Virus record (IMG/VR): IMGVR_UViG_3300046542_000227
Coordinates: 1-64,000 of that record
DNA: 64,000 bases
Direction: 5' to 3' (one strand)
The translations under genes and the position numbers were made by a program. Shown in pieces: positions 38,411 through 52,186 of the stretch (positions are counted from its first letter, which is position 1; every line of letters begins with the position of its first letter). Below the pieces are notes generated by a model that saw only the letters and a list, made by a program, of their open reading frames with translations, did not search any database and had not been told where the DNA came from.

Positions 38411-40114
38411 ATGTTAGACATTGATATTCCGCTGGCGTCCAACACCAAGACGGCCAACACGTACACGCTTCTGTTTAATCGGATCGCTACACTGCATCCG
38501 ACGCTTGGGGTAACCCAAGCCACGCACTTCGTTAAGACCATCAAACAAATGCCAACGCGTTATCGGCCATGGCAATCGATTGCTATTATAGGCAAGCGCG
38601 ACGATCCGAATTGGGAACAACAATTTCGTTATGACCGCTATCCAATCTCCCGCTACATCAGTAACCCTGTGTTTACCGACGCTGAGTTGCCCGTGGTGGC
38701 GGAACTGGATGAGCTTGGTATGTTGGCGTACCTGACCAACAAGTTCAACATGGGTATCAACCAACGTGACTTCGCTGTGCGTCCGGCTGGGATTCAATAC
38801 ACCGGTGGACGTGTGCGTCCTAACTGGCGTCTGTTCAGTTTGCCCGAATCCCCATTCTGGTATAACGACCAAGTGCTGTGGCTGCACAAACCCGGTGAGC
38901 CTGAAGACCCGACTGTTCCAGAGATCCCTACTGGACTGACGGTCTTTACTGAATGGTTGCCTCCATTCACCAACCCACATGCTAACCTGATTGCGGACGA
39001 AACCAAGACCTATACCGAGTTCTACTTTAAGGCTAACGGTTTATTCGCTAGTCCGAAGACCGTGCTCGATGCCTTTATCTCCGGCGGCTTTCTGGTGAAC
39101 CGTGCTGGGTCTGCTGCTATCGCCCCACATGTGCCGGTGAGTACCGGTACAGGTATTGCCTCCAACGTCCCGGTTGATTACACCAACGATGCTGTGTTGT
39201 CCCAGTATGACTTGGTGAACCAAGGGGATATCAATGGTACCGTTGCCATTACCACTGACGTGTTCAAGCTCCGTGAAGGCTTCTATGTAGCATGGAGTAC
39301 TTGGAACGATGCCACGCCAATCGCAGGTCCTGCTGACTTCGAAAGTGCTGTGCCACGCACTGCAGACTTCTTCGGTTCATTGCCGGTTATTGTGAGCCGG
39401 TTGCCTTACGCCATGGAGGCGGGCTTCCGTCCTGCTGCTGATGTACCGGGTGGGAGCAAGTGGGTAGACAACATGGGCTTGCCTGGTGCAATCACCTGTA
39501 AGTTTACCACTGAACAACCTAACCTCGTTTTCACTGGCCCGATAGCTGGCTTTACCGGGATCGTTAAACGCGGTAACTATGGTAAGCGGGTTTCGGATCT
39601 GAAGCTTGAAGATATCCGTTGTGGCGTGATCTACCGTAACGGTAAAGGTCAGGTGGTGATCAATGGTAATGTCGTCCTAGAACGCACAGCAGCTTTCGGC
39701 AGTGACCTGTATCTGGAAGCAGCGTTTGAGTTCACCACTCGGGGTAGTGATGGGGCCTCCTATATCGGCGTGTCTGGTATGCAGGCGGCTTTGGCTGCTG
39801 GTAAGATCAGTGCTCCCTTTAAAGGCATCCGGGCTAAGTGTACGACGGCTGATATCCACATGGGTGGGGCTAGCACGTACAAGGCTATTAAGGCGGGTGC
39901 TTTCGTTACCAGAACTCGTACCAGTAGTAGTGCGGCTACTGATGTAGCTGATGCTACCCAAAACCTCACTTACGACTTCTCGTTAGGCGACAGTGTGTTC
40001 TACTCCGTCAGTGATTGCACTTGTACGTCGACCCAATACGGCGTGCGGTCATCGATCGAGTCGTATGAGAAGTACGATAATGAACTCTTGGTCACTCGTG
40101 TAATTACACCGTGA
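38411..40114 (+). CDS. Virion protein: family N-terminal anchor domain plus variable beta-rich C-terminus
   Basis: N-terminal FRYDRYPI...YLTNKFNMGINQRDF...SPFWY resembles 11197..11745; Pro linker KPGEPEDPTVPEIP. Confidence 0.5.
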   Translation: MLDIDIPLASNTKTANTYTLLFNRIATLHPTLGVTQATHFVKTIKQMPTRYRPWQSIAIIGKRDDPNWEQQFRYDRYPISRYISNPVFTDAELPVVAELDELGMLAYLTNKFNMGINQRDFAVRPAGIQYTGGRVRPNWRLFSLPESPFWYNDQVLWLHKPGEPEDPTVPEIPTGLTVFTEWLPPFTNPHANLIADETKTYTEFYFKANGLFASPKTVLDAFISGGFLVNRAGSAAIAPHVPVSTGTGIASNVPVDYTNDAVLSQYDLVNQGDINGTVAITTDVFKLREGFYVAWSTWNDATPIAGPADFESAVPRTADFFGSLPVIVSRLPYAMEAGFRPAADVPGGSKWVDNMGLPGAITCKFTTEQPNLVFTGPIAGFTGIVKRGNYGKRVSDLKLEDIRCGVIYRNGKGQVVINGNVVLERTAAFGSDLYLEAAFEFTTRGSDGASYIGVSGMQAALAAGKISAPFKGIRAKCTTADIHMGGASTYKAIKAGAFVTRTRTSSSAATDVADATQNLTYDFSLGDSVFYSVSDCTCTSTQYGVRSSIESYEKYDNELLVTRVITP

Positions 40115-40154: not shown

Positions 40155-40769
40155 ATGTCACTGAACGTGCCACCGATGGGTACTCGTGGGCTGTATAGTC
40201 TGAAAGCACCGTTCTCTACGGTTGCTAACCAACTGTACACCTGCACGGCTATCCGTTTCTTCAAGGACATCCAGAACCAAGGCACGGATGTCTTTGCCAA
40301 GTACTACGAACCGAAAGGTCTGAGCCAAGCGGACTACACTCGCGATCTGGCGGCTAACGTCGCCATCGTGTCGTTGACCAGTGAGACCCAGGCTCCGATC
40401 TATATCCCCAGCTCCTACATCTTAAGCTTCCCGGGACTGACCAGCTTTAACTACCAGCAAGTCGTGCTTAGCGCGACACTGGGGGCGCTGCCAGATACCT
40501 TGGACTTGACCTTCCTGAAAACCCAGGTGGCTACGACCATCGCTGCGGTACTCGGGTTCGTCCCAACGATCTATGAGAACGTTGCAGCTTCGACTGGGGT
40601 GATCACACCAGAGCAACACGATGCGCTCGAAGCAGCGCGTCAGGCAGGGGTGACTAACCAAACCACCGACTATGCCCGGTACATTGAGGAACGTGATAAG
40701 CGCATTGTCCTCGAACAAAAACTGGCGGCCTTGGAACAACTGATGATCAGTAAGGGCGTCTTGAACTAA
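40155..40769 (+). CDS. Conserved phiKZ-like virion protein
   Basis: PP.GT.G.YSL..PF N-terminus; C-terminal coiled coil; precedes the internal head genes. Confidence 0.55.
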   Translation: MSLNVPPMGTRGLYSLKAPFSTVANQLYTCTAIRFFKDIQNQGTDVFAKYYEPKGLSQADYTRDLAANVAIVSLTSETQAPIYIPSSYILSFPGLTSFNYQQVVLSATLGALPDTLDLTFLKTQVATTIAAVLGFVPTIYENVAASTGVITPEQHDALEAARQAGVTNQTTDYARYIEERDKRIVLEQKLAALEQLMISKGVLN

Positions 40770-40808
40770 CCAACCATATGTAGTTACCTTCTGCAACTGG
40801 AGTATCCC

Positions 40809-43313
40809 ATGAGTAAAAATCTGGAATGGCTGGAGCGCGTCTCGAAAGAATCTGCTGAGACGGCCAGCATCAAACCTGAAGGCGTGGATCTGAGCGCTGA
40901 CAGTGAAGCTGCCAACATTGTTGGTGGTGACGAAAAGCTGACCAACGAAGGCAAGAGCTCCGCCAACCACAGTGTTGATCTGAAAGACGCTACCGTGCCT
41001 GACGACAACGCTGACGCAGCTGATGCCGATAAGCAAATTGGCGTCAAGGTTTCTGCCGAAGACAATGGCCCGGACTTCAATATCGATCTGAAAACCGGCA
41101 AGCCGTCTGTTGAAGACGAGCAAACTGACGAAGAGAAAGAAGCTGCTGAAGCCGAAGCTGCCGCGGCAGCCGCTGCTGGTGATACCGGTGAAGCTGGCGC
41201 TGAAGGCGTACCGGGTGAGCCAGGTGAAGGTGGCGAAGCTACCGACCCAATCGTTGAAGTGCCGGTTGAAGGCGCTCCGGGCGAAGATGCTCCAGGTGAT
41301 GGCGGCGACGCCGTTGCTCCGACCGAACCAGTAGAAGGCGTTGAACCTGCTGCCGGTGAACCACCTGTTGATGGCGAGCCTCCAGTAGAAGGCACCGAGC
41401 CTGGTGCTGACGACCTCCCTGTTGTTGAAGGCACTGACGCTGTACCGGTTGAAGCCGGTGAGCCTGTGCTGCCAGAAGGTACTGATGGCGTTGCTGGCAC
41501 TGATGCTGTGGCTGAGCTCGAAGGTGGTGATGCTGCCGCTGTCGACCCAACTGCTGATTCGGGCAAGGTCATGATCGCTGTTGATCCGGTCACCGAGATC
41601 AAAGAAGGTCCTGAAGCTGCTGCTGAAGCAGCTGTGGCCGAAGGCGCTACCGAAACCCCACTGACCAACGAAGAACTGCCAGAAGGCACCGAAGCTGTTT
41701 CGCAAGAGGGCTTCTCGGGTGGTCTGGTCGGTTTCCTCGTCGGCGGTATGGGTTGGGCTCCATTCGTGGGTGCCGGCGTAAACGGTGCCGTTAAGGCCAA
41801 GCGTCTGAAGATGCAGCAGGACATCGAAGCGATCTCCAAGCGTATCGCCAAGATCCGTGCCGGTGATATCGAAGACGCCAAGAAGAATGGCATGACCATT
41901 CCGAAAAGCGCTCAAGGTGTGGACTGGATGGAAATCGCCAAGTCCGCGGTCCTGGGTCAGTTCCTCGGCCCGATCTACGGCGCTCGTCAGGGTAACCAGC
42001 TGCAGAACCTGAACAACGAACTCACTGCCAAGCTGAAAGAGTTGGAAAAGGAGATCGAAGCTGCTGGTATCTCCAACGAAGACTTCGAGCTGGCTGATGA
42101 AGCCGAACCTGAAGTTGCCATCGACGACATGGCTGACGACGACATCACCAGCGAGTTCGACGCTGTTGGCGAAGACGTTTCCAGCCTGGGTGAAATGGGC
42201 GCTGCTCTGGAAGAGTACAACTCTATCCTGCGTGCTGAAACCAATGCTGGTCGTCCGTTCAGCCCTGCGCTGGTGCGTGCTATCAAGATCGGTCTGGAAC
42301 ACTACAACGAACCTTTCCTGCTGGAAGGTGCTCCGTCGGTAGAAGACTTCTCCGATAACATCGGCAAGTTCACCGTCAGCAACGAGTTCGCTGAAGGTCT
42401 GGGCGCTAAAGCCAAGGCTGTGGGCGGCGCTATCATCGAGGCCATCAAGAAGCTGATCGCCAAGCTGGCTGACATCGCTGCTGATATGATGCACAACGTC
42501 GGCAAGCTGCAAGAAGCCAACGATGCGCTGGGCAAACAAGTCGCTGCACTGAAGTCTGACGTTAAAGGTCAGATCGATGTTTCCTCGGCTACCCGTTTGC
42601 TCGTGGGTGGTGAGTTCGCTGGTGACAACGCGCAGAACTACGCGCGTGTTCGTCAGTTCTGCGACAAGTTCATGGTTGACTATCCGAAGTTCAACCGTGG
42701 TCTGGCCATGGGCATCATGAAAGTCATCGAAGAGATGCACGCCCAAGGTATGCAGAAGCTTCCGCCTGAAGAGATCGCTAGCGTCTTCGAAAGTCAGTTC
42801 CACCCAGGTATGTTCGGCGTACTGGCGATCGGTAAAGACGATGTTAAAGAGATGGCTGGCTTTGACTCGCTGTTTGCCTCGCCGGTGCTGTTGGGCAACC
42901 GTCGTATGGTGGTGGGCAAGTCTGAGATGGCCAGCAAGAACGGCATCGCAGCACTGTCCAGCTGCTGGAAGGTTTCGCTGGTTGCAGGCGCTGTCGGTGC
43001 AAACCCAGCTCTGTCGGTAGCGCTGCCTGATCCACAGCAACTGCGCAACATCGTCAAAGAACTGGATGCGCTGGTTAAGGCTATCCCGAACTACGCCGGT
43101 GCGGCCAAGAAAATGGCCAGCGATCAGAACCTGTTGAAGGTCTACACCCATCCGTGGGTTTCCGGTGAACTGCAACACGCAGCCTCCGGTCTGGTAGCTT
43201 CGATGACTACACCTACTGGCCACCTGGTCGGTTACGTGGCTAACCTCGTTAAAGTCGGTCAAGCATTCGTAGCGAGCTGCGTAGCTCAACACAGCGCTGG
43301 CGCCAAGGCGTAA
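40809..43313 (+). CDS. Internal head protein (phiKZ gp162/gp93 family) with long acidic propeptide and an internal hydrophobic module
   Basis: Many S/A/G-x-E sites (SKE, SAE, SVE, SQE, SNE); helical C-domain; TATG at 40777 upstream. Confidence 0.65.
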   Translation: MSKNLEWLERVSKESAETASIKPEGVDLSADSEAANIVGGDEKLTNEGKSSANHSVDLKDATVPDDNADAADADKQIGVKVSAEDNGPDFNIDLKTGKPSVEDEQTDEEKEAAEAEAAAAAAAGDTGEAGAEGVPGEPGEGGEATDPIVEVPVEGAPGEDAPGDGGDAVAPTEPVEGVEPAAGEPPVDGEPPVEGTEPGADDLPVVEGTDAVPVEAGEPVLPEGTDGVAGTDAVAELEGGDAAAVDPTADSGKVMIAVDPVTEIKEGPEAAAEAAVAEGATETPLTNEELPEGTEAVSQEGFSGGLVGFLVGGMGWAPFVGAGVNGAVKAKRLKMQQDIEAISKRIAKIRAGDIEDAKKNGMTIPKSAQGVDWMEIAKSAVLGQFLGPIYGARQGNQLQNLNNELTAKLKELEKEIEAAGISNEDFELADEAEPEVAIDDMADDDITSEFDAVGEDVSSLGEMGAALEEYNSILRAETNAGRPFSPALVRAIKIGLEHYNEPFLLEGAPSVEDFSDNIGKFTVSNEFAEGLGAKAKAVGGAIIEAIKKLIAKLADIAADMMHNVGKLQEANDALGKQVAALKSDVKGQIDVSSATRLLVGGEFAGDNAQNYARVRQFCDKFMVDYPKFNRGLAMGIMKVIEEMHAQGMQKLPPEEIASVFESQFHPGMFGVLAIGKDDVKEMAGFDSLFASPVLLGNRRMVVGKSEMASKNGIAALSSCWKVSLVAGAVGANPALSVALPDPQQLRNIVKELDALVKAIPNYAGAAKKMASDQNLLKVYTHPWVSGELQHAASGLVASMTTPTGHLVGYVANLVKVGQAFVASCVAQHSAGAKA

Positions 43314-43319
43314 CTTGTT

Positions 43320-43352
43320 GAGGGTGGGCAACCACCCTCTTCTATTTCTTTT
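43320..43352 (+). terminator. Intrinsic terminator
   Basis: GAGGGTGG-GCAA-CCACCCTC-TTCTATTTCTTTT. Confidence 0.75.
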
Positions 43353-43361
43353 GAGGTTGAC

Positions 43362-44555
43362 ATGAGCGTAGCTGAATTTAATCAGGTTCGCCGTGACGTC
43401 GATCACATGCACAAACTCTCCTGTGCACTGGAAGCCTATCAGGAACTGCTCGGTGGCAAAGATATCGCCGCCGGTAGTGCTGAAGGACGTGCCATCAGTC
43501 TTGGGTTGGAATCTATCGACCCGAGTATTGACTTGAAGGAAGGTTCTTTCATCACGATGCGCGTAATCAAGGAAGGCATCATCAAGGTGGCTAAGGCTAC
43601 CCGTGAAGTCGTCCGGTTGCTGTTCGAGGTGTTGGGTAACCTGTACGTCAAGTTCACAGGCAGTTTGGGTCGGGTTCGTGGTCACCAGAAAAACGTTGCC
43701 AAGCGACTAGGTCGTCTGGGTAGCCGTGTGTCCTACAAACAAATGGAAATCTCTGGCATCAACCGGCTGTCGGTAAACGGTACCTTCGTAGGTGACGATC
43801 CGAACACGCTGGTCGGTATCCGTGCGGTTTCCGAATTCCTGCTCAATCAACACCCGGCGATGGTTGTGAAGGTTGCACGTCTGTGCAGTCGTCGCTTCTT
43901 GGATCTGGTCGACAACGGAAGCGGCTCCGATGCACAAGCTACGGCTCGTGCTGGGATGACTGTGTTCCTGCAGGTAATGCAGACGGCGATGAAACCTATC
44001 GTCGGTGAGCAGCCTGTTAAGAACGGCGAGCTACCACAGTCGTTTGAGGCAGGGCGTTACAACCGCAGTGCAGTGATGCCGGGTAACTGGGCATTGGTCT
44101 ACACTGCAGTGGCTGATCAACTACGTGAAGCCAGCAGCATCAACATCAACACGTACGGTAATGTGATCAAGCAAGCTTTCAAGATTGACTTCTTGGAGCT
44201 GACCATGAACACCGCTGACCGTGCGGCACGTACTGTCGACGTACCCTCGATTCAAACCTTGGGTCAGTTGGTAGACGGGATCTCTAAGGTCCTTGACGTT
44301 GCTGAGAAGGCCGAGACTGGTCGTCGTGACTTTGCTACAGTGAAGGTCGTGGTGGATGATGCTATCCGTCAAGTGATGGACCTGCCGACGAATGACGGTA
44401 AGTTGAACGGTACTGTGATCCAGATGTTGGGTGCACTGTCGGAAACGATGGCGGCTCCAATGGGTAACTTCACTCACTGGGTTGCGGTAACACTGAACAT
44501 CTACCTGAACTACATCGATCATTGCATCAAGCATTACGAAGTAGAAGGCGTCTGA
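43362..44555 (+). CDS. Internal head protein paralog (phiKZ gp163-like)
   Basis: ALEAYQELL...AISLGLE|SID and I.ISGINRLSVNG.F.G motifs parallel the neighbouring paralog. Confidence 0.65.
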   Translation: MSVAEFNQVRRDVDHMHKLSCALEAYQELLGGKDIAAGSAEGRAISLGLESIDPSIDLKEGSFITMRVIKEGIIKVAKATREVVRLLFEVLGNLYVKFTGSLGRVRGHQKNVAKRLGRLGSRVSYKQMEISGINRLSVNGTFVGDDPNTLVGIRAVSEFLLNQHPAMVVKVARLCSRRFLDLVDNGSGSDAQATARAGMTVFLQVMQTAMKPIVGEQPVKNGELPQSFEAGRYNRSAVMPGNWALVYTAVADQLREASSININTYGNVIKQAFKIDFLELTMNTADRAARTVDVPSIQTLGQLVDGISKVLDVAEKAETGRRDFATVKVVVDDAIRQVMDLPTNDGKLNGTVIQMLGALSETMAAPMGNFTHWVAVTLNIYLNYIDHCIKHYEVEGV

Positions 44556-44683: not shown

Positions 44684-45691
44684 ATGGTAAACGTATTGCT
44701 CGCACAAAAGCTACACCACCACTTGATCAGCTGCGCCATGAACCGTGAACTGACGTGGTTCAATCAAGTGCATGACGTGATCCATGGTACGGAGCACGAA
44801 GATACCTCAGAAGAAGAGGTACAGGAAACCAACGACATTATCAACGCCTTGGCTACTTGGCTGCGCAGCAAGAACATGCCACGCCTTACCGTGCTGATTA
44901 ACAGCGGTAAAGGGGCTGTGGGTGTAGGCAATGGTTTCTGGAAGAACTGTGGGTTGACTGTAAACCCTGCACACTACGAACCAGTGTACAAGATGCTGGT
45001 ACAAGAGTGCTACTCGTACTACGCGGGTTTCTGTGGCTTCGGTCCAGAGATACAGGACATCGTTGAGAAACGCATCCGCGATGCCCGCAACGATGAGTCG
45101 GTCAACAGCGCTGAGATCCTCATGGTGGTCTCGGAACAGATCGAGTACTATGGTCGAGCATCCACCAGTTATGACCAGATTCATTTGGATGCGGTCGGCG
45201 ATAAGCTGATTCCCAAAAACCCACACAAAGAGTTCTTCATTAACATGGCCAAGTGGTTTGAACGGGCCTGCCATGAGAATGACTGCGGTCGCCCAGTGTG
45301 GGACATGGAGTTCTTGCGTGGGGCTATTAAGAAGCTACGTCGTGAGTTCACCCTGACTATCCCTATGGGTGCAACGCATAACCTGTTTAATCTAACCCTC
45401 GGTCGTGAGCTGAAGGAGGGTGAAGCGTATATGGCCACGGTGGATCAGATCCAGATGCTTACCGTGTGTAAGATCGAGGCGTCGGGTCAGAGCCCTATCG
45501 AGCACATCAGTGTTCGCGACGGTCGTTTGCTGGACAGTCCTGAGGCTGGGCGGAACATATACGGTGCAGGGAAGGCTGGTACTATTGAAGTGACTGCTAC
45601 CGGTGACCGTGAACGTTGCTGGTTCAGTGCCCACTGTGGTGGTGAGATCTTTAGCCACGTCACTATCCATGTAACCTTCCGCATGAACTAA
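44684..45691 (+). CDS. Hypothetical protein, 335 aa, His/Cys-rich
   Basis: Single gene between two terminators; no recognisable motif. Confidence 0.6.
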   Translation: MVNVLLAQKLHHHLISCAMNRELTWFNQVHDVIHGTEHEDTSEEEVQETNDIINALATWLRSKNMPRLTVLINSGKGAVGVGNGFWKNCGLTVNPAHYEPVYKMLVQECYSYYAGFCGFGPEIQDIVEKRIRDARNDESVNSAEILMVVSEQIEYYGRASTSYDQIHLDAVGDKLIPKNPHKEFFINMAKWFERACHENDCGRPVWDMEFLRGAIKKLRREFTLTIPMGATHNLFNLTLGRELKEGEAYMATVDQIQMLTVCKIEASGQSPIEHISVRDGRLLDSPEAGRNIYGAGKAGTIEVTATGDRERCWFSAHCGGEIFSHVTIHVTFRMN

Positions 45692-51409: not shown

Positions 51410-52186
51410 TTACCAGCCCATGTAACCGGGACGGCGTGCTTTGGTTTCACGTTTGACGCGGGACCAACCAAGTTCTTTGATCAGCCCTTCATAGTCAACA
51501 GAGTTGTCTTCGAGGCCGAGGCCACGATTACGAGCCTGCTCACGAGCCAAGCCATGGAGAATCTCTGGGGTCACTTCAAGAGTGTTCTCGAAGTCTTCCA
51601 GCGATGGTGCTTGGTATTTGTTGGCAACGTAGATACCACCTTCACCTACGAAGTCGTGGGTAACGACCTCACGGGTGTACTTGATCTGCGACATCATGTC
51701 ATCGACAGTGATGGAACGGACCGAGAAGTAAGTGGCCATGGCCGGGTTCTTCAGGGACTCTTCGACGAACTTGCCGTAAGGGCCGAATGGACGCACCCAT
51801 GCAATGACCAACGTGATCGGACGACCATGTTCATCTTTGCTCGGAACCAGTTCGTAGTCACGGATGTGGTGACTCCAGCGATCAGGGTTAACCTGACGGA
51901 TGCGGGCCATGTACGCTTGGTCCGACATACCTTGGGAACGCTCTGGGTGTTTCCACTCACCATAGAGCACGCCTTTCTTAACCTGACGCATGAGCTGAGA
52001 GCCTGGCGCAAACATCGCGATGCCAGACTTCTCGTCGTACAGATAGCCGCCGCTGTTGTAAGCGTTGTAAGCACCCACCGGGCACGGGTAGTAACCTTGT
52101 GCGTCGGGTTGCAGGATACCCTGCTTGTTGGTACCGGCGAGCATGGTAGAACCGATGCGCACCGACTGGCGAAGTGGTTGTTGCAT
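51410..52186 (-). CDS. Prohead (head maturation) serine protease, phiKZ gp175-like
   Basis: GEWKHP, SHHI, YFSVRS (catalytic Ser), HDFVGEGGI; C-terminal SLE|DF self-cleavage-type site. Confidence 0.85.
   Translation of the reverse strand: MQQPLRQSVRIGSTMLAGTNKQGILQPDAQGYYPCPVGAYNAYNSGGYLYDEKSGIAMFAPGSQLMRQVKKGVLYGEWKHPERSQGMSDQAYMARIRQVNPDRWSHHIRDYELVPSKDEHGRPITLVIAWVRPFGPYGKFVEESLKNPAMATYFSVRSITVDDMMSQIKYTREVVTHDFVGEGGIYVANKYQAPSLEDFENTLEVTPEILHGLAREQARNRGLGLEDNSVDYEGLIKELGWSRVKRETKARRPGYMGW

What the first reader, a model, noticed from the sequence alone, without database searches (positions are those of the whole stretch)
41709..42080. Internal head protein looks like a polyprotein releasing a 124-aa glycine-zipper membrane module
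Within the 834-aa protein, an acidic propeptide ends at VSQE|GF. A 124-aa segment follows and ends at ISNE|DF, then another acidic spacer (PSVE|DF, VSNE|FA) precedes the family domain. These match the S/A/G-x-E specificity established for phiKZ gp175-type proteases, one of which is encoded at 51410. The excised piece is basic and has two hydrophobic Gly-rich helices (GGLVGFLVGGMGWAPFVGAGVNGA; SAVLGQFLGPIYGA), each followed by a coiled coil. It could be a packaged, ejected membrane-active protein, for example for genome entry or the early infection vesicle.
Basis: partly seen in the sequence, partly recalled or inferred. Interest (0 to 1): 0.6.

Follow-up and report, generated by a model that had tools for sequence, protein, structure and literature searches.

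The report
Protease-flanked glycine-zipper module in head protein
A giant nucleus-forming phage encodes, inside an internal head protein, a conserved 124-residue hydrophobic and basic module that is bounded by head-protease sites and belongs to an undescribed, mobile domain family; it is probably cut free in the capsid and acts on the host membrane at infection, but neither step has been shown.

Summary
Window 41709-42080 encodes residues 301-424 of an 834-aa phiKZ-type internal head protein (PF12699). It lies exactly between VSQE|GF and ISNE|DF, in a 267-kb chimallin-encoding phage that has an S80 prohead protease at 51410-52186.

A profile search of 1.84 billion proteins shows the segment is a discrete, unannotated domain family of 75 cluster representatives. 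It occurs inside internal head proteins, at their N- or C-ends, and as stand-alone 141-173-aa genes with a short leader. In 60 of 66 representatives an [S/A/G]-x-E protease motif sits directly before an almost invariant Gly1. A second site follows the module whenever more protein lies downstream.

The module is basic (pI 9.3) between two acidic stretches (pI 4.05), holds the most hydrophobic segment of the protein, and is depleted in internal cleavage motifs.

The polyprotein principle is already known (phiKZ gp162N, gp93), and a protease-exposed hydrophobic N-terminus has been proposed for SPN3US gp47. The new part is the domain family and its cleavage-generated N-terminus, which resembles a viral fusion peptide.

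Cleavage, retention in the virion, ejection and membrane activity are inferred. The ortholog in phage Noxifer lacks the module, so it is dispensable there.

The parts
40809..43313 (+). Gene for the 834-aa internal head protein precursor (P0001); GGAG 8 nt upstream of the ATG
   Evidence: PF12699 E 4e-38 and phrog_8282 'internal head protein' E 2e-69
40809..40850 (+). N-terminal leader, aa 1-14 (MSKNLEWLERVSKE), ending in an SxE motif. It is conserved in the Noxifer-like orthologs and is a likely capsid-targeting or first cleavage site
   Evidence: Alignment (71-78% identity in the Noxifer-like orthologs). Analogy to phiKZ gp93 SLE-13 and the N-termini of SPN3US gp53/54 (PMC5694885). Inferred.
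40851..41708 (+). Acidic propeptide, aa 15-300: pI 4.05, 75 D+E, 16 [SAG]xE matches within aa 15-300, the last of them the border site SQE298-300
   Evidence: 4.5 motif matches per 100 aa across orthologs
41697..41708 (+). N-border site V-S-Q-E (aa 297-300), with predicted cleavage after E300
   Evidence: Conserved as [VI]S[QEN]E in all 8 close homologs. [SAG]xE sits directly upstream of Gly1 in 60 of 66 family representatives, with V preferred at P4. V at P4 is also preferred by SPN3US gp245 (PMC10052503).
41709..42080 (+). The 124-aa module (aa 301-424; 13.1 kDa, pI 9.26). It is a member of an unannotated domain family
41709..41792 (+). Gly-zipper 1, an uncharged run at aa 301-328 (from GFSGGLVGF to NGAV). 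Invariant in the 8 close homologs: G1 F2 G4 G8 F9 G12 W16 P18 F19 V20 G21 A22
   Evidence: Hydropathy maximum of the whole protein: KD19 1.61, Wimley-White octanol -3.8 and interface -5.6 kcal/mol. G1 is present in 64 of 66 and G4 in 66 of 66 family representatives.
41784..41885 (+). Predicted helix 1 (module residues 26-59). It is basic and amphipathic, with family-conserved hydrophobic positions at 35, 39, 42, 46 and 49 (heptad spacing)
   Evidence: AF2 model, pLDDT 85-89 in this stretch; column statistics
41943..41984 (+). Gly-zipper 2, an uncharged run at aa 379-392 (SAVLGQFLGPIYGA; family consensus GAxLGxxFGPFYGA)
41982..42062 (+). Predicted helix 2 (module residues 92-118), with conserved hydrophobic positions at 98, 101, 105, 109, 112 and 116
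42069..42080 (+). C-border site I-S-N-E (aa 421-424), with predicted cleavage after E424
   Evidence: Conserved as an SxE at or within a few residues of the module end in all 8 close homologs. A site lies within -8..+25 of the module end in 36 of 37 family members that continue downstream.
42081..42344 (+). Acidic stretch, aa 425-512 (pI 4.05). It is part of the PF12699 model from aa 435, is shared with Noxifer gp175, and is the probable family propeptide. It ends in PSVE512
42375..42386 (+). VSNE (aa 523-526), the alternative or second maturation site before the mature domain. It is conserved as TVS[NQ]E in most of the Noxifer-like orthologs (LSQE in P0009) and is not alignable in P0007 and P0011
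42387..43310 (+). Mature internal-head-protein domain, aa 527-834 (pI 8.97, about 32 kDa)
43362..44555 (+). Second, shorter PF12699 internal head protein paralog (397 aa) with no module
40155..40769 (+). DUF7194 gene immediately upstream. It is the syntenic marker of the internal-head-protein locus in Noxifer-like phages
51410..52186 (-). Prohead (head maturation) protease, MEROPS S80 family, 258 aa. It is the presumed enzyme for all the sites above
   Evidence: PF20034 E 5e-84 (score 281 against a cut-off of 23.4); phrog_3014 E 1e-82; 76% identity to the Noxifer protease and 51% to proteases of PA7-like Pseudomonas phages

Best explanation
The 834-aa protein is a phiKZ-type internal head protein precursor built as acid-base-acid-base.

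**Proposed sequence of events.**
1. The precursor is incorporated into the prohead.
2. The S80 prohead protease cuts after Glu at V-S-x-E-type sites.
3. The two acidic stretches are fragmented and lost. They have 4-4.5 motif matches per 100 aa.
4. Two basic products remain with the DNA: the roughly 32-kDa internal-head-protein domain and the 13-kDa module G301-E424.
5. Cleavage creates a free N-terminal Gly-Phe at the head of a 28-residue uncharged glycine-zipper peptide. Before cleavage, the acidic propeptide probably keeps this peptide soluble and inactive.
6. The module is then ejected with the DNA and the other internal proteins. Its N-terminal peptide and the second Gly-zipper insert into the host inner membrane. 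The two amphipathic helices form a hairpin or bundle.
7. This helps to breach or remodel the membrane at the entry site. In a chimallivirus that could include the membrane of the early infection vesicle.

**Shown.** Domain autonomy; conservation of the sites; charge and hydrophobicity pattern; presence of the protease gene; depletion of internal sites.

**Inferred.** Actual cleavage, retention, ejection and membrane activity.
For: **1. It is an autonomous domain.** A profile of 8 modules found 75 cluster representatives among 1.84 billion proteins (49 at E<=1e-10). They occur in four architectures: internal, N-proximal, C-terminal and stand-alone with an 18-35-aa leader. Most sit in phiKZ gp91/PF12699 loci.

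**2. The borders are cleavage sites.**
- [SAG]xE lies directly before Gly1 in 60 of 66 representatives, against about 3% per position by chance. P1 is E in 62 of 66 and P4 is V in 30 of 66.
- P1' is G in 64 of 66, although known S80 sites show no Gly requirement at P1' (S, R, D and N in phiKZ; S preferred in SPN3US). The Gly is therefore a need of the module, not of the enzyme (PMC11297242; PMC10052503).
- A downstream site is present in 36 of 37 members that continue, and in only 8 of 29 that end with the module.

**3. There is selection to stay intact.**
- Internal motif matches number 104 against 142.8 +/- 10 expected.
- In the orthologs there are 0.83 per 100 aa in the module, against 4.5 and 4.0 in the acidic parts.

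**4. It is strongly constrained.** Module identity is 61-70% to homologs whose internal-head-protein domains are only 16-45% identical.

**5. It has membrane-type properties.**
- It contains the top hydrophobic and interfacial segment of the protein.
- GxxxG zippers are conserved family-wide.
- There are weak matches to Gly-zipper membrane families (DUF1269 in 7 of 8 members, LapA).
- The best PDB sequence match aligns module residue 1 with residue 1 of influenza B HA2, its fusion peptide (E 0.05, sub-threshold).

**6. There is precedent.**
- phiKZ gp162N (18-137) and the gp93 N-terminal region are protease products retained in the capsid.
- phiKZ PF12699 proteins are injected and co-localise with membrane-stained puncta (bioRxiv 10.1101/2024.03.24.586471).
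- The mature fragment of SPN3US gp47 begins with a predicted TM helix after ALE-111 and was inferred to be an ejection protein acting on the host membrane (PMC5694885).

**7. The setting fits.** The genome encodes chimallin.
Against: - There are no proteomic or functional data for any family member. The model phages with virion mass spectrometry (phiKZ, SPN3US) lack the module.
- Noxifer, the closest isolated relative, has the orthologous gene with the module cleanly deleted and no copy elsewhere. The module is therefore not essential in that phage and host.
- Hydrophobicity is borderline for a true TM helix (KD19 1.61). The second element is only 14 uncharged residues.
- About a third of family members carry a motif match inside the module, around position 97, so some could be cut internally.
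- The HA2 and filovirus GP2 similarities are below significance.
- Fold searches gave only generic helical hairpins.
- The trimer prediction gave no verdict.
- The family members are phylogenetically related, so the shuffle statistics overstate independence.
Confidence: 0.5

Rival explanations
1. **Assembly-only module.** The hydrophobic and coiled-coil segment acts in the precursor. It might nucleate or organise the prohead core, or tether the assembling prohead to the inner membrane. After cleavage it is expelled or degraded with the acidic propeptides. The conserved sites would then serve to remove it.
For: - Chimallivirus capsids assemble on the host membrane (review PMC13282480).
- Prohead release and core clearance depend on the protease (PMC10052503; PMC5694885).
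- Scaffold-like helical character, with one member giving a weak Phage_scaffold hit.
- 25 of 72 members have an internal motif match near position 97.
- Noxifer does without it.
Against: - The near-invariant Gly at P1' and the exact placement of the site at the first residue of the hydrophobic peptide are not needed for mere removal.
- Internal sites are depleted rather than enriched, unlike the propeptides that are cleared.
- The module is basic, like the retained internal-head-protein domain, and unlike the acidic parts.
- Stand-alone versions consist of nothing but leader plus module, so the module would be the only mature product of those genes.
- Upstream there are 286 acidic residues, which argues against membrane insertion of the precursor (inference from the positive-inside rule).
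Confidence: 0.22
2. **Structural capsid or inner-body piece with no membrane role.** After cleavage the module stays in the head as a lining or DNA-organising protein, like phiKZ gp162N and the gp93 N-region. The Gly-rich segments would pack against capsid proteins or against each other.
For: - phiKZ gp162N is a protease product of about 120 aa with two similar halves, bound under the capsid shell (PMC11297242). The module is likewise about 124 aa with two repeats of Gly-rich element plus helix.
- Its basic charge would suit DNA contact.
Against: - There is no sequence similarity to any PDB chain at E<=0.01, phiKZ capsid chains included, if they are in the copy searched.
- A capsid-lattice component would be expected to be universal in a lineage with the same capsid. 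Yet Noxifer, phiKZ and SPN3US lack it.
- It moves between N-terminal, internal, C-terminal and stand-alone contexts.
- A 28-residue uncharged, Gly/Phe/Trp-rich free N-terminus is more typical of membrane-interacting peptides.
Confidence: 0.18
3. **No excision.** The SxE motifs at the borders are not used, or only the N-terminal one is. The segment then remains a covalently attached N-terminal domain of the mature internal head protein.
For: - Motif matches alone are poor predictors: there are 25 in this protein.
- Many SPN3US head proteins with motifs are not cut (PMC10052503).
- No data exist for this phage.
Against: - A site follows the module in 36 of 37 members with downstream sequence.
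- The module occurs on either side of the internal-head-protein domain and alone.
- The spacer after it is acidic, rich in motif matches and poorly conserved, like the propeptide.
Confidence: 0.1

Closest known systems
phiKZ gp162 and gp93 (PF12699 inner-body/IP-family proteins processed by gp175)
   Same: - Same protein family (PF12699) and same protease family (S80).
- Several cleavages after Glu release an N-terminal fragment of about 120 aa (gp162N, residues 18-137) that has its own role in the mature capsid, while the helix-rich C-domain goes to the inner body (PMC11297242).
- The N-terminal leader site is comparable: gp93 SLE-13 against VSKE-14 here.
   Different: - The released piece here is unrelated in sequence. 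It gave no PDB match, and phiKZ has no profile hit.
- It is hydrophobic, Gly-zipper-bearing and basic.
- It lies after a 286-aa acidic region rather than at the N-terminus.
- It is a mobile domain that is also found alone.
SPN3US gp47 (essential ejection protein with a protease-exposed N-terminal TM helix)
   Same: - It is a head protein of a phiKZ-related giant phage.
- Its mature form, after prohead-protease cleavage at ALE-111, starts with a hydrophobic helix.
- Its authors proposed that it is ejected and interacts with the host membrane (PMC5694885). This is the same logic as proposed here.
   Different: - It is not a family member: the module profile gives no hit in SPN3US.
- gp47 has a classical Leu/Ile/Val TM helix that begins a few residues after the site, not a Gly-zipper starting at P1'.
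- The rest of gp47 (about 460 aa) stays attached.
Class I viral fusion proteins (influenza HA2 fusion peptide plus heptad repeat; filovirus GP2)
   Same: - A protease cut creates a free N-terminal Gly that heads a Gly-rich hydrophobic peptide, followed by a heptad-repeat helix.
- The pattern G-F-x-G-x-x-x-G-F-L-x-G-G is shared with influenza B HA2 residues 1-13. The profile alignment runs from residue 1 to residue 1.
- There is a sub-threshold Pfam match to the Ebola GP2 HR1-HR2 family (E 0.0016, 18.7 bits against a cut-off of 27).
   Different: - The similarity is statistically insignificant (E 0.05-0.1) and there is no evidence of common descent.
- The module is a 124-aa internal capsid protein of a non-enveloped phage, without an ectodomain or a C-terminal TM anchor.
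- Trimer formation is not supported or tested.
- Treat this as functional analogy or convergence only.
Maturation-cleaved membrane-penetration peptides of non-enveloped viruses (adenovirus protein VI, nodavirus gamma peptide, reovirus mu1N, picornavirus VP4); from general knowledge
   Same: - Capsid-internal polypeptides are primed by a maturation cleavage, stored inside the particle and released at entry to disrupt a membrane.
- One family member gave a weak hit to the adenovirus pVI family (E 0.023).
   Different: - There is no homology.
- Those act on endosomal membranes of eukaryotic cells.
- Here delivery would be through a contractile tail into a Gram-negative envelope.
Glycine-zipper membrane motifs (GxxxGxxxG; Pfam Gly-zipper families, DUF1269)
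   Same: - Two conserved GxxxGxxxG-type runs.
- Weak DUF1269 matches in 7 of 8 members (best E 0.014).
   Different: - All matches are below the gathering thresholds.
- Those families are chromosomal membrane or outer-membrane proteins, not protease-released phage head components.

Membership tests
phiKZ-like internal head protein (Pfam PF12699) | Significant match to the family profile over most of its length | tested here: met
   Residues 435-816 match profile positions 14-380 of 387, E 4e-38, 131.9 bits against a cut-off of 27. phrog_8282 'internal head protein' E 2e-69.
phiKZ-like internal head protein (Pfam PF12699) | Location in the internal-head-protein gene array of a phiKZ-related jumbo phage, next to paralogs | tested here: met
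   A second PF12699 gene lies at 43362-44555. The order is syntenic with Noxifer gp174-gp176. The genome is 267 kb and has chimallin.
phiKZ-like internal head protein (Pfam PF12699) | Presence in the virion, proteolytic processing and injection | not testable with these tools
   This is a metagenomic phage and no proteome exists. The Noxifer ortholog is annotated as 'virion structural protein'.
Substrate of an S80 (phiKZ gp175-type) prohead protease | An S80 protease is encoded in the same genome | tested here: met
   PF20034 E 5e-84 at 51410-52186.
Substrate of an S80 (phiKZ gp175-type) prohead protease | Cleavage C-terminal to Glu in an S/A/G-x-E motif, with V favoured at P4 | tested here: inconclusive
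   Motifs are present and conserved at both borders. They agree with published logos (PMC5694885; PMC10052503). Actual cleavage was not observed.
The module family itself (unnamed; defined here by profile A3/A4) | Conserved order of elements: G-hydrophobic-x-G-x3-G-hydrophobic N-terminus, helix (KLxxEIxxIAKxI), conserved G61 loop, GAxLGxxFGPFYGA, helix (LxxELxxKxKEL) | tested here: met
   The window sequence scores 219 bits against the 8-sequence profile and E 1e-48 against the 72-sequence profile. Alignment.
Class I viral fusion protein | Significant sequence or fold similarity to HA2, GP2 or gp41-type proteins | tested here: not met
   Best E 0.05 (PDB profile) and 0.0016 (Pfam, below cut-off). 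No fusion-protein fold stands out: SARS HR core Z 6.5, among hundreds of generic helical matches.
Class I viral fusion protein | Trimeric coiled coil or six-helix bundle | tested here: inconclusive
   Heptad-spaced Ile positions are conserved at 39, 42, 46 and 49. The 3-copy prediction gave no verdict, score 0.05.
Integral membrane / glycine-zipper protein | Hydrophobic segment long and hydrophobic enough to span or partition into a bilayer | tested here: inconclusive
   The run is 28 uncharged residues, with KD19 1.61 (borderline), Wimley-White octanol -3.8 and interface -5.6 kcal/mol. No dedicated TM predictor was available.
SPN3US gp47-like ejection protein | Sequence relationship to gp47 | tested here: not met
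   The module profile gives no hit in the SPN3US genome or the gp47 region. The sequence after ALE-111 is a different kind of TM helix.

The most novel reading that the evidence does not exclude
The module defines a previously unrecognised family of capsid-stored, maturation-protease-primed membrane-insertion or fusion proteins of jumbo phages. It would be a phage counterpart of the fusion peptides and lytic peptides of animal viruses. The free N-terminal Gly-zipper, exposed only after prohead cleavage, would drive inner-membrane remodelling at genome entry. In chimalliviruses it would contribute to building or sealing the early infection vesicle.
Probability: 0.25. Interest if true: 0.85.

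Novelty: new variant of a known kind. Interest (0 to 1): 0.62.

Why it matters
How phiKZ-like phages get DNA and dozens of proteins across the inner membrane is an open question. So is the origin of the lipid early infection vesicle and the phage factors that shape it (review PMC13282480).

A conserved, portable head-protein module looks membrane-active and looks switched on by the head protease. That makes it a concrete, testable candidate factor.

It also gives annotators a new domain with a sharply defined, cleavage-generated N-terminus. It shows that internal-head-protein genes are polyproteins whose cargo modules are shuffled between positions and genes.

Natural presence and absence (the window phage against Noxifer) and an isolated carrier (Ralstonia phages FLC1-1B and FLC4-3B) make the question experimentally tractable.

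Tried and rejected
**Searches that found nothing or little**
- megablast of the gene and tblastn of the module against 50,697 phage records gave no match.
- tblastn with divergent members found only Ralstonia phages FLC1-1B and FLC4-3B.
- A word-index search for stand-alone relatives of 68-217 aa found none. This was a false negative, later overturned by the exhaustive profile search.
- The ESM Atlas look-alike search gave scores <=0.85, with nothing usable.
- The listing of cluster members showed all ten looked-up family representatives to be unnamed metagenomic proteins.
With the 8-sequence alignment it gave only two IMG/VR loci.

**Candidate members that are not members**
- SPN3US gp47 was tested as a possible member and is not one.
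- phiKZ and Noxifer genomes have no copy.

**Structure**
- AF2 with 8 sequences gave a poor model, pLDDT 61.6. With 57 sequences it gave pLDDT 76.4.
- Foldseek against PDB found nothing at E<=0.001.
- VIA-align wide gave a best Z of 7.1, with generic helical hairpins and channel pore domains only. No conclusion was drawn.
- The homo-trimer prediction gave 'no answer' (score 0.05). It is not evidence either way.

**Statistics**
- Site avoidance within the 8 close homologs, taken singly, was inconclusive (P 0.03-0.67). Only the pooled, segment-wise test shows depletion.

**Ideas considered and dropped**
- Homology to HA2 or GP2 was considered and rejected as unsupported. It is kept only as analogy.
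- The long antisense ORFs over the gene were considered and dismissed as composition artefacts.

**Not used**


Full report
**What is in the window.** The window is the first 64 kb of a 267,320-bp viral record with direct terminal repeats. Its nearest named relative is Pseudomonas phage Noxifer: the prohead protease is 76% identical, and the gene order around the finding is syntenic. The genome encodes a homolog of the phiKZ nuclear shell protein, with 40% identity and E 6e-115 at 185185-186957 of the record. It is therefore a nucleus-forming chimallivirus.

ORF 40809-43313 (+), preceded by GGAG, gives an 834-aa protein. Pfam PF12699 (phiKZ-like internal head protein) matches residues 435-816 at E 4e-38, and PHROG 8282 agrees. 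A second, shorter paralog follows at 43362-44555. The ORF at 51410-52186 (-) is a clear S80 prohead protease (PF20034, E 5e-84).

**The observation.** Window 41709-42080 is in frame and encodes residues 301-424, from GFSGGLVGF to AAGISNE. VSQE precedes it and DFEL follows it. PSVE512 and VSNE526 lie further on.

The protein has an alternating charge design.

| Residues | Region | pI |
|---|---|---|
| 15-300 | acidic propeptide (75 acidic residues) | 4.05 |
| 301-424 | module, 13.1 kDa | 9.26 |
| 425-512 | acidic stretch | 4.05 |
| 527-834 | mature domain | 8.97 |

Residues 301-328 form the longest uncharged run. They also contain the hydropathy maximum of the whole protein: Kyte-Doolittle 19-residue mean 1.61, Wimley-White octanol -3.8 kcal/mol and interface -5.6 kcal/mol. 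Residues 379-392 form a second, shorter uncharged Gly-zipper.

One correction is needed. The stretch 425-512 is not an extra spacer. It is part of the family model and is shared with Noxifer, so it is probably the family's own propeptide.

**Is it more than chance?** A single S/A/G-x-E means little, because this Glu-rich protein has 25 such matches. The comparative evidence is what counts.

- **Noxifer.** Noxifer gp175 is the syntenic ortholog, about 45-56% identical in the alignable parts. It has a clean gap that removes the module and its immediate flanks.
- **Close homologs.** A word search restricted to residues 290-440 found seven metagenomic PF12699 proteins with the module. In their alignment the acidic flanks are essentially unalignable. 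Conservation starts abruptly at [VI]S[QEN]E|GF and ends at an SxE (ISNE, ISTE, ISVE, VSNE or ASTE).
- **Two lineages.** One is Noxifer-like (DUF7194, then the module-bearing head protein, then a second head protein). The other is more distant, with a phiKZ-like array (gp91-like gene, then the module-bearing head protein, then three more head proteins).
- **Constraint.** Module identity stays at 61-70% even where the internal-head-protein domain has fallen to 16-18%.

**A domain family.** The claim turns on whether relatives exist in other contexts, so I used the exhaustive profile search. It returned 75 cluster representatives at E<=1e-3, of which 49 were at E<=1e-10. Classified by position, they fall into four groups:
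- 18 internal;
- 19 close to the N-terminus of 560-800-aa proteins;
- 13 at the extreme C-terminus of proteins of about 600 aa;
- 16 under 200 aa, of which 13 listed representatives are 141-173 aa and consist of an 18-35-residue acidic leader plus the module.

Where neighbours could be read, the genes mostly sit in gp91/PF12699 loci. One stand-alone gene lies in a different phage context.

None of the ten representatives looked up carries a name, and no Pfam, PHROG or PDB entry describes the module. Among isolated phages I found it only in Ralstonia phages FLC1-1B and FLC4-3B. There it occupies about residues 34-150 of gp259, which is annotated as hypothetical. The profile finds nothing in phiKZ, SPN3US or Noxifer.

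**The borders are part of the domain.**
- In 60 of 66 representatives whose match starts at profile position 1-2, [SAG]xE lies immediately upstream. The background density of the motif in these proteins is 3% per position.
- P1 is Glu in 62. P3 is Ser in 38 and Ala in 19. P4 is Val in 30 and Tyr in 13.
- P1' is Gly in 64 and P4' is Gly in 66.
- Several of the six exceptions have a site a few residues away, so they look like alignment offsets.

Published S80 sites show cleavage after Glu in A/S-x-E, with Val favoured at P4. They show no Gly preference at P1': Ser is preferred in SPN3US, and Ser, Arg, Asp and Asn occur in phiKZ (PMC10052503; PMC5694885; PMC11297242). The invariant Gly1 is therefore a property of the module, not of the enzyme. 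This suggests that a free Gly N-terminus matters for what the module does.

On the C-side, a motif lies within -8..+25 of the module end in 36 of 37 members that continue downstream. It does so in only 8 of 29 members that end with the module. The window of 33 residues is generous, with a chance expectation of roughly 60%, so this is supportive rather than decisive.

Internal motif matches are depleted. There are 104 observed against 142.8 +/- 10 in segment-wise shuffles of 72 modules. In the nine orthologs there are 0.83 per 100 residues in the module, against 4.5 and 4.0 in the acidic parts and 1.5 in the internal-head-protein domain. Relatedness among members inflates the nominal significance. 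Also, 25 of 72 members do have a match near position 97.

**Structure.** AlphaFold2 with the 57-sequence alignment gives pLDDT 76.4 and pTM 0.70. The predicted elements are:
- a short helix at residues 2-14;
- a low-confidence Gly-rich turn;
- a long helix at 26-59;
- a short helix at 73-81;
- a helix at 92-118.

Family-conserved hydrophobic positions fall at 35, 39, 42, 46 and 49, and at 98, 101, 105, 109, 112 and 116. This is heptad-like spacing with a narrow apolar stripe.

Foldseek and an exhaustive VIA-align search gave only generic helical-hairpin matches, with best Z 7.1, well inside the noise for helical models. A three-copy complex prediction returned no verdict. Oligomerisation is therefore untested.

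**The fusion-peptide resemblance.** The best sequence matches in the PDB, for both the single sequence and the profile, are class I fusion subunits. Influenza B HA2 aligns residue 1 to residue 1 over about 60 positions and shares G-F-x-G-x-x-x-G-F-L-x-G-G. Filovirus GP2 aligns around its fusion loop. Pfam gives a sub-threshold match to the Ebola GP2 HR1-HR2 family.

All of these are statistically insignificant (E 0.05-0.1 for the PDB matches, and 18.7 bits against a cut-off of 27 for Pfam). I do not claim homology. The parallel is functional: a protease creates a free N-terminal Gly at the head of a Gly-rich hydrophobic peptide, and a heptad-repeat helix follows.

**What it most likely does.** The precursor enters the prohead. 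Its N-terminal 14 residues end in an SxE, as in phiKZ gp93 (SLE-13) and SPN3US gp53/54. The S80 protease then dices the acidic parts and releases two basic products, the module and the internal-head-protein domain. The acidic propeptide plausibly masks the basic, hydrophobic module until then.

phiKZ PF12699 proteins are proteolysed, packaged and injected. They co-localise with membrane-dye puncta at the entry site (bioRxiv 10.1101/2024.03.24.586471). The early infection vesicle appears to derive from the inner membrane (PMC13282480). I therefore rank a capsid-stored, ejected, membrane-inserting role first, at a confidence of about 0.5.

Of this chain, the following are shown: the domain's autonomy, its borders, its physicochemical character, its depletion in sites, and the presence of the enzyme. 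Cleavage, retention, ejection and membrane action are inferred.

**Rivals.**
- **An assembly-phase role followed by clearance (0.22).** This fits membrane-associated capsid assembly and the module's dispensability in Noxifer. It does not explain the invariant Gly1, the site depletion, or stand-alone genes whose only mature product would be the module.
- **A purely structural role like phiKZ gp162N (0.18).** This fits the size and the two-repeat layout. It does not fit the patchy distribution, the positional mobility, or the lack of similarity to known capsid chains.
- **No excision (0.10).** This is contradicted by the conserved downstream site and by the architectures.

**Relation to what is known.** The polyprotein principle is established. 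phiKZ gp162 is cut at E17 and E137, and the fragment of about 120 aa is a capsid-bound protein. The N-terminal region of gp93 behaves similarly. A protease-exposed hydrophobic N-terminus in an ejection protein was proposed for SPN3US gp47, which I show is not a relative.

Three things are new:
- the domain family itself;
- its sharply conserved, cleavage-defined Gly N-terminus;
- its shuffling between positions and genes.

I file it as a new variant of a known kind.

**Caveats.** No family member has experimental data. The model phages with virion proteomes lack the module. Noxifer shows that it is not universally required. Hydrophobicity is borderline for a transmembrane helix. The family statistics rest on related sequences.

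Noticed in passing
window 38411-40114 (+): This 567-aa ORF matches the 161-aa family phrog_22247 end to end with only its first 160 residues. The Noxifer and L005 genes at this position are 162 aa. The window phage therefore carries a C-terminal extension of about 400 aa with no family match except a faint 'minor tail protein' hit (E 0.008).
   Followed up: partly
window 40422-43685 (-) and 40784-41899 (-): Very long antisense open frames (1087 and 371 aa) overlap the internal head protein gene. Their translations are low-complexity, rich in Ser, Pro, Ala and Gly. They look like by-products of the Glu/Ala/Gly/Pro codon bias of the sense strand, not genes.
   Followed up: no
G000 185185-186957 (outside the window; locus L012): A homolog of phiKZ gp54 (chimallin, the nuclear shell protein) with 40% identity and E 6e-115. 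The phage is a nucleus-forming chimallivirus.
   Followed up: yes
L007:5746-8007 (Ralstonia phage FLC1-1B gp259; also FLC4-3B): An annotated 'hypothetical protein' of an isolated jumbo phage carries the module at about aa 34-150, directly after PANE|G. A basic linker, a second PANE|S and an acidic region follow. It is the only cultured carrier found, and it has a different domain order (module before the acidic region).
   Followed up: partly
P0001 against P0005 and against P0007/P0011 (alignment A2): Between close relatives the module is less conserved (76%) than its flanks (90-91% upstream, 82% in the internal-head-protein domain). Between distant ones it is far more conserved (61-68% against 16-18%). 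Either about 60% of positions are under hard constraint, or the module has moved laterally between internal-head-protein genes. This is not resolved.
   Followed up: partly
window 40809-40850 and homologs (alignment A2, columns 1-20): The N-terminal leader MSxNLxWLxRVSQE is conserved among the Noxifer-like orthologs, even though the following 280 residues are low-complexity. This parallels the conserved, cleaved N-termini of phiKZ gp93 (SLE-13) and SPN3US gp53/54. It is a probable capsid-targeting signal.
   Followed up: partly
contig of P0025 (ENA ERZ27275305, 35.6 kb; no DNA held): A stand-alone module gene (153 aa) lies among genes with T4_Y16D, SLT lysozyme, SNase and papain-like peptidase domains, not in a phiKZ-type internal-head-protein array. 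The family may therefore extend beyond phiKZ-like head loci.
   Followed up: no
window 44684-45691 (+): This 335-aa ORF lies directly after the two internal head protein genes. It has no Pfam or PHROG match. The corresponding position in Noxifer holds a 320-aa hypothetical protein.
   Followed up: no
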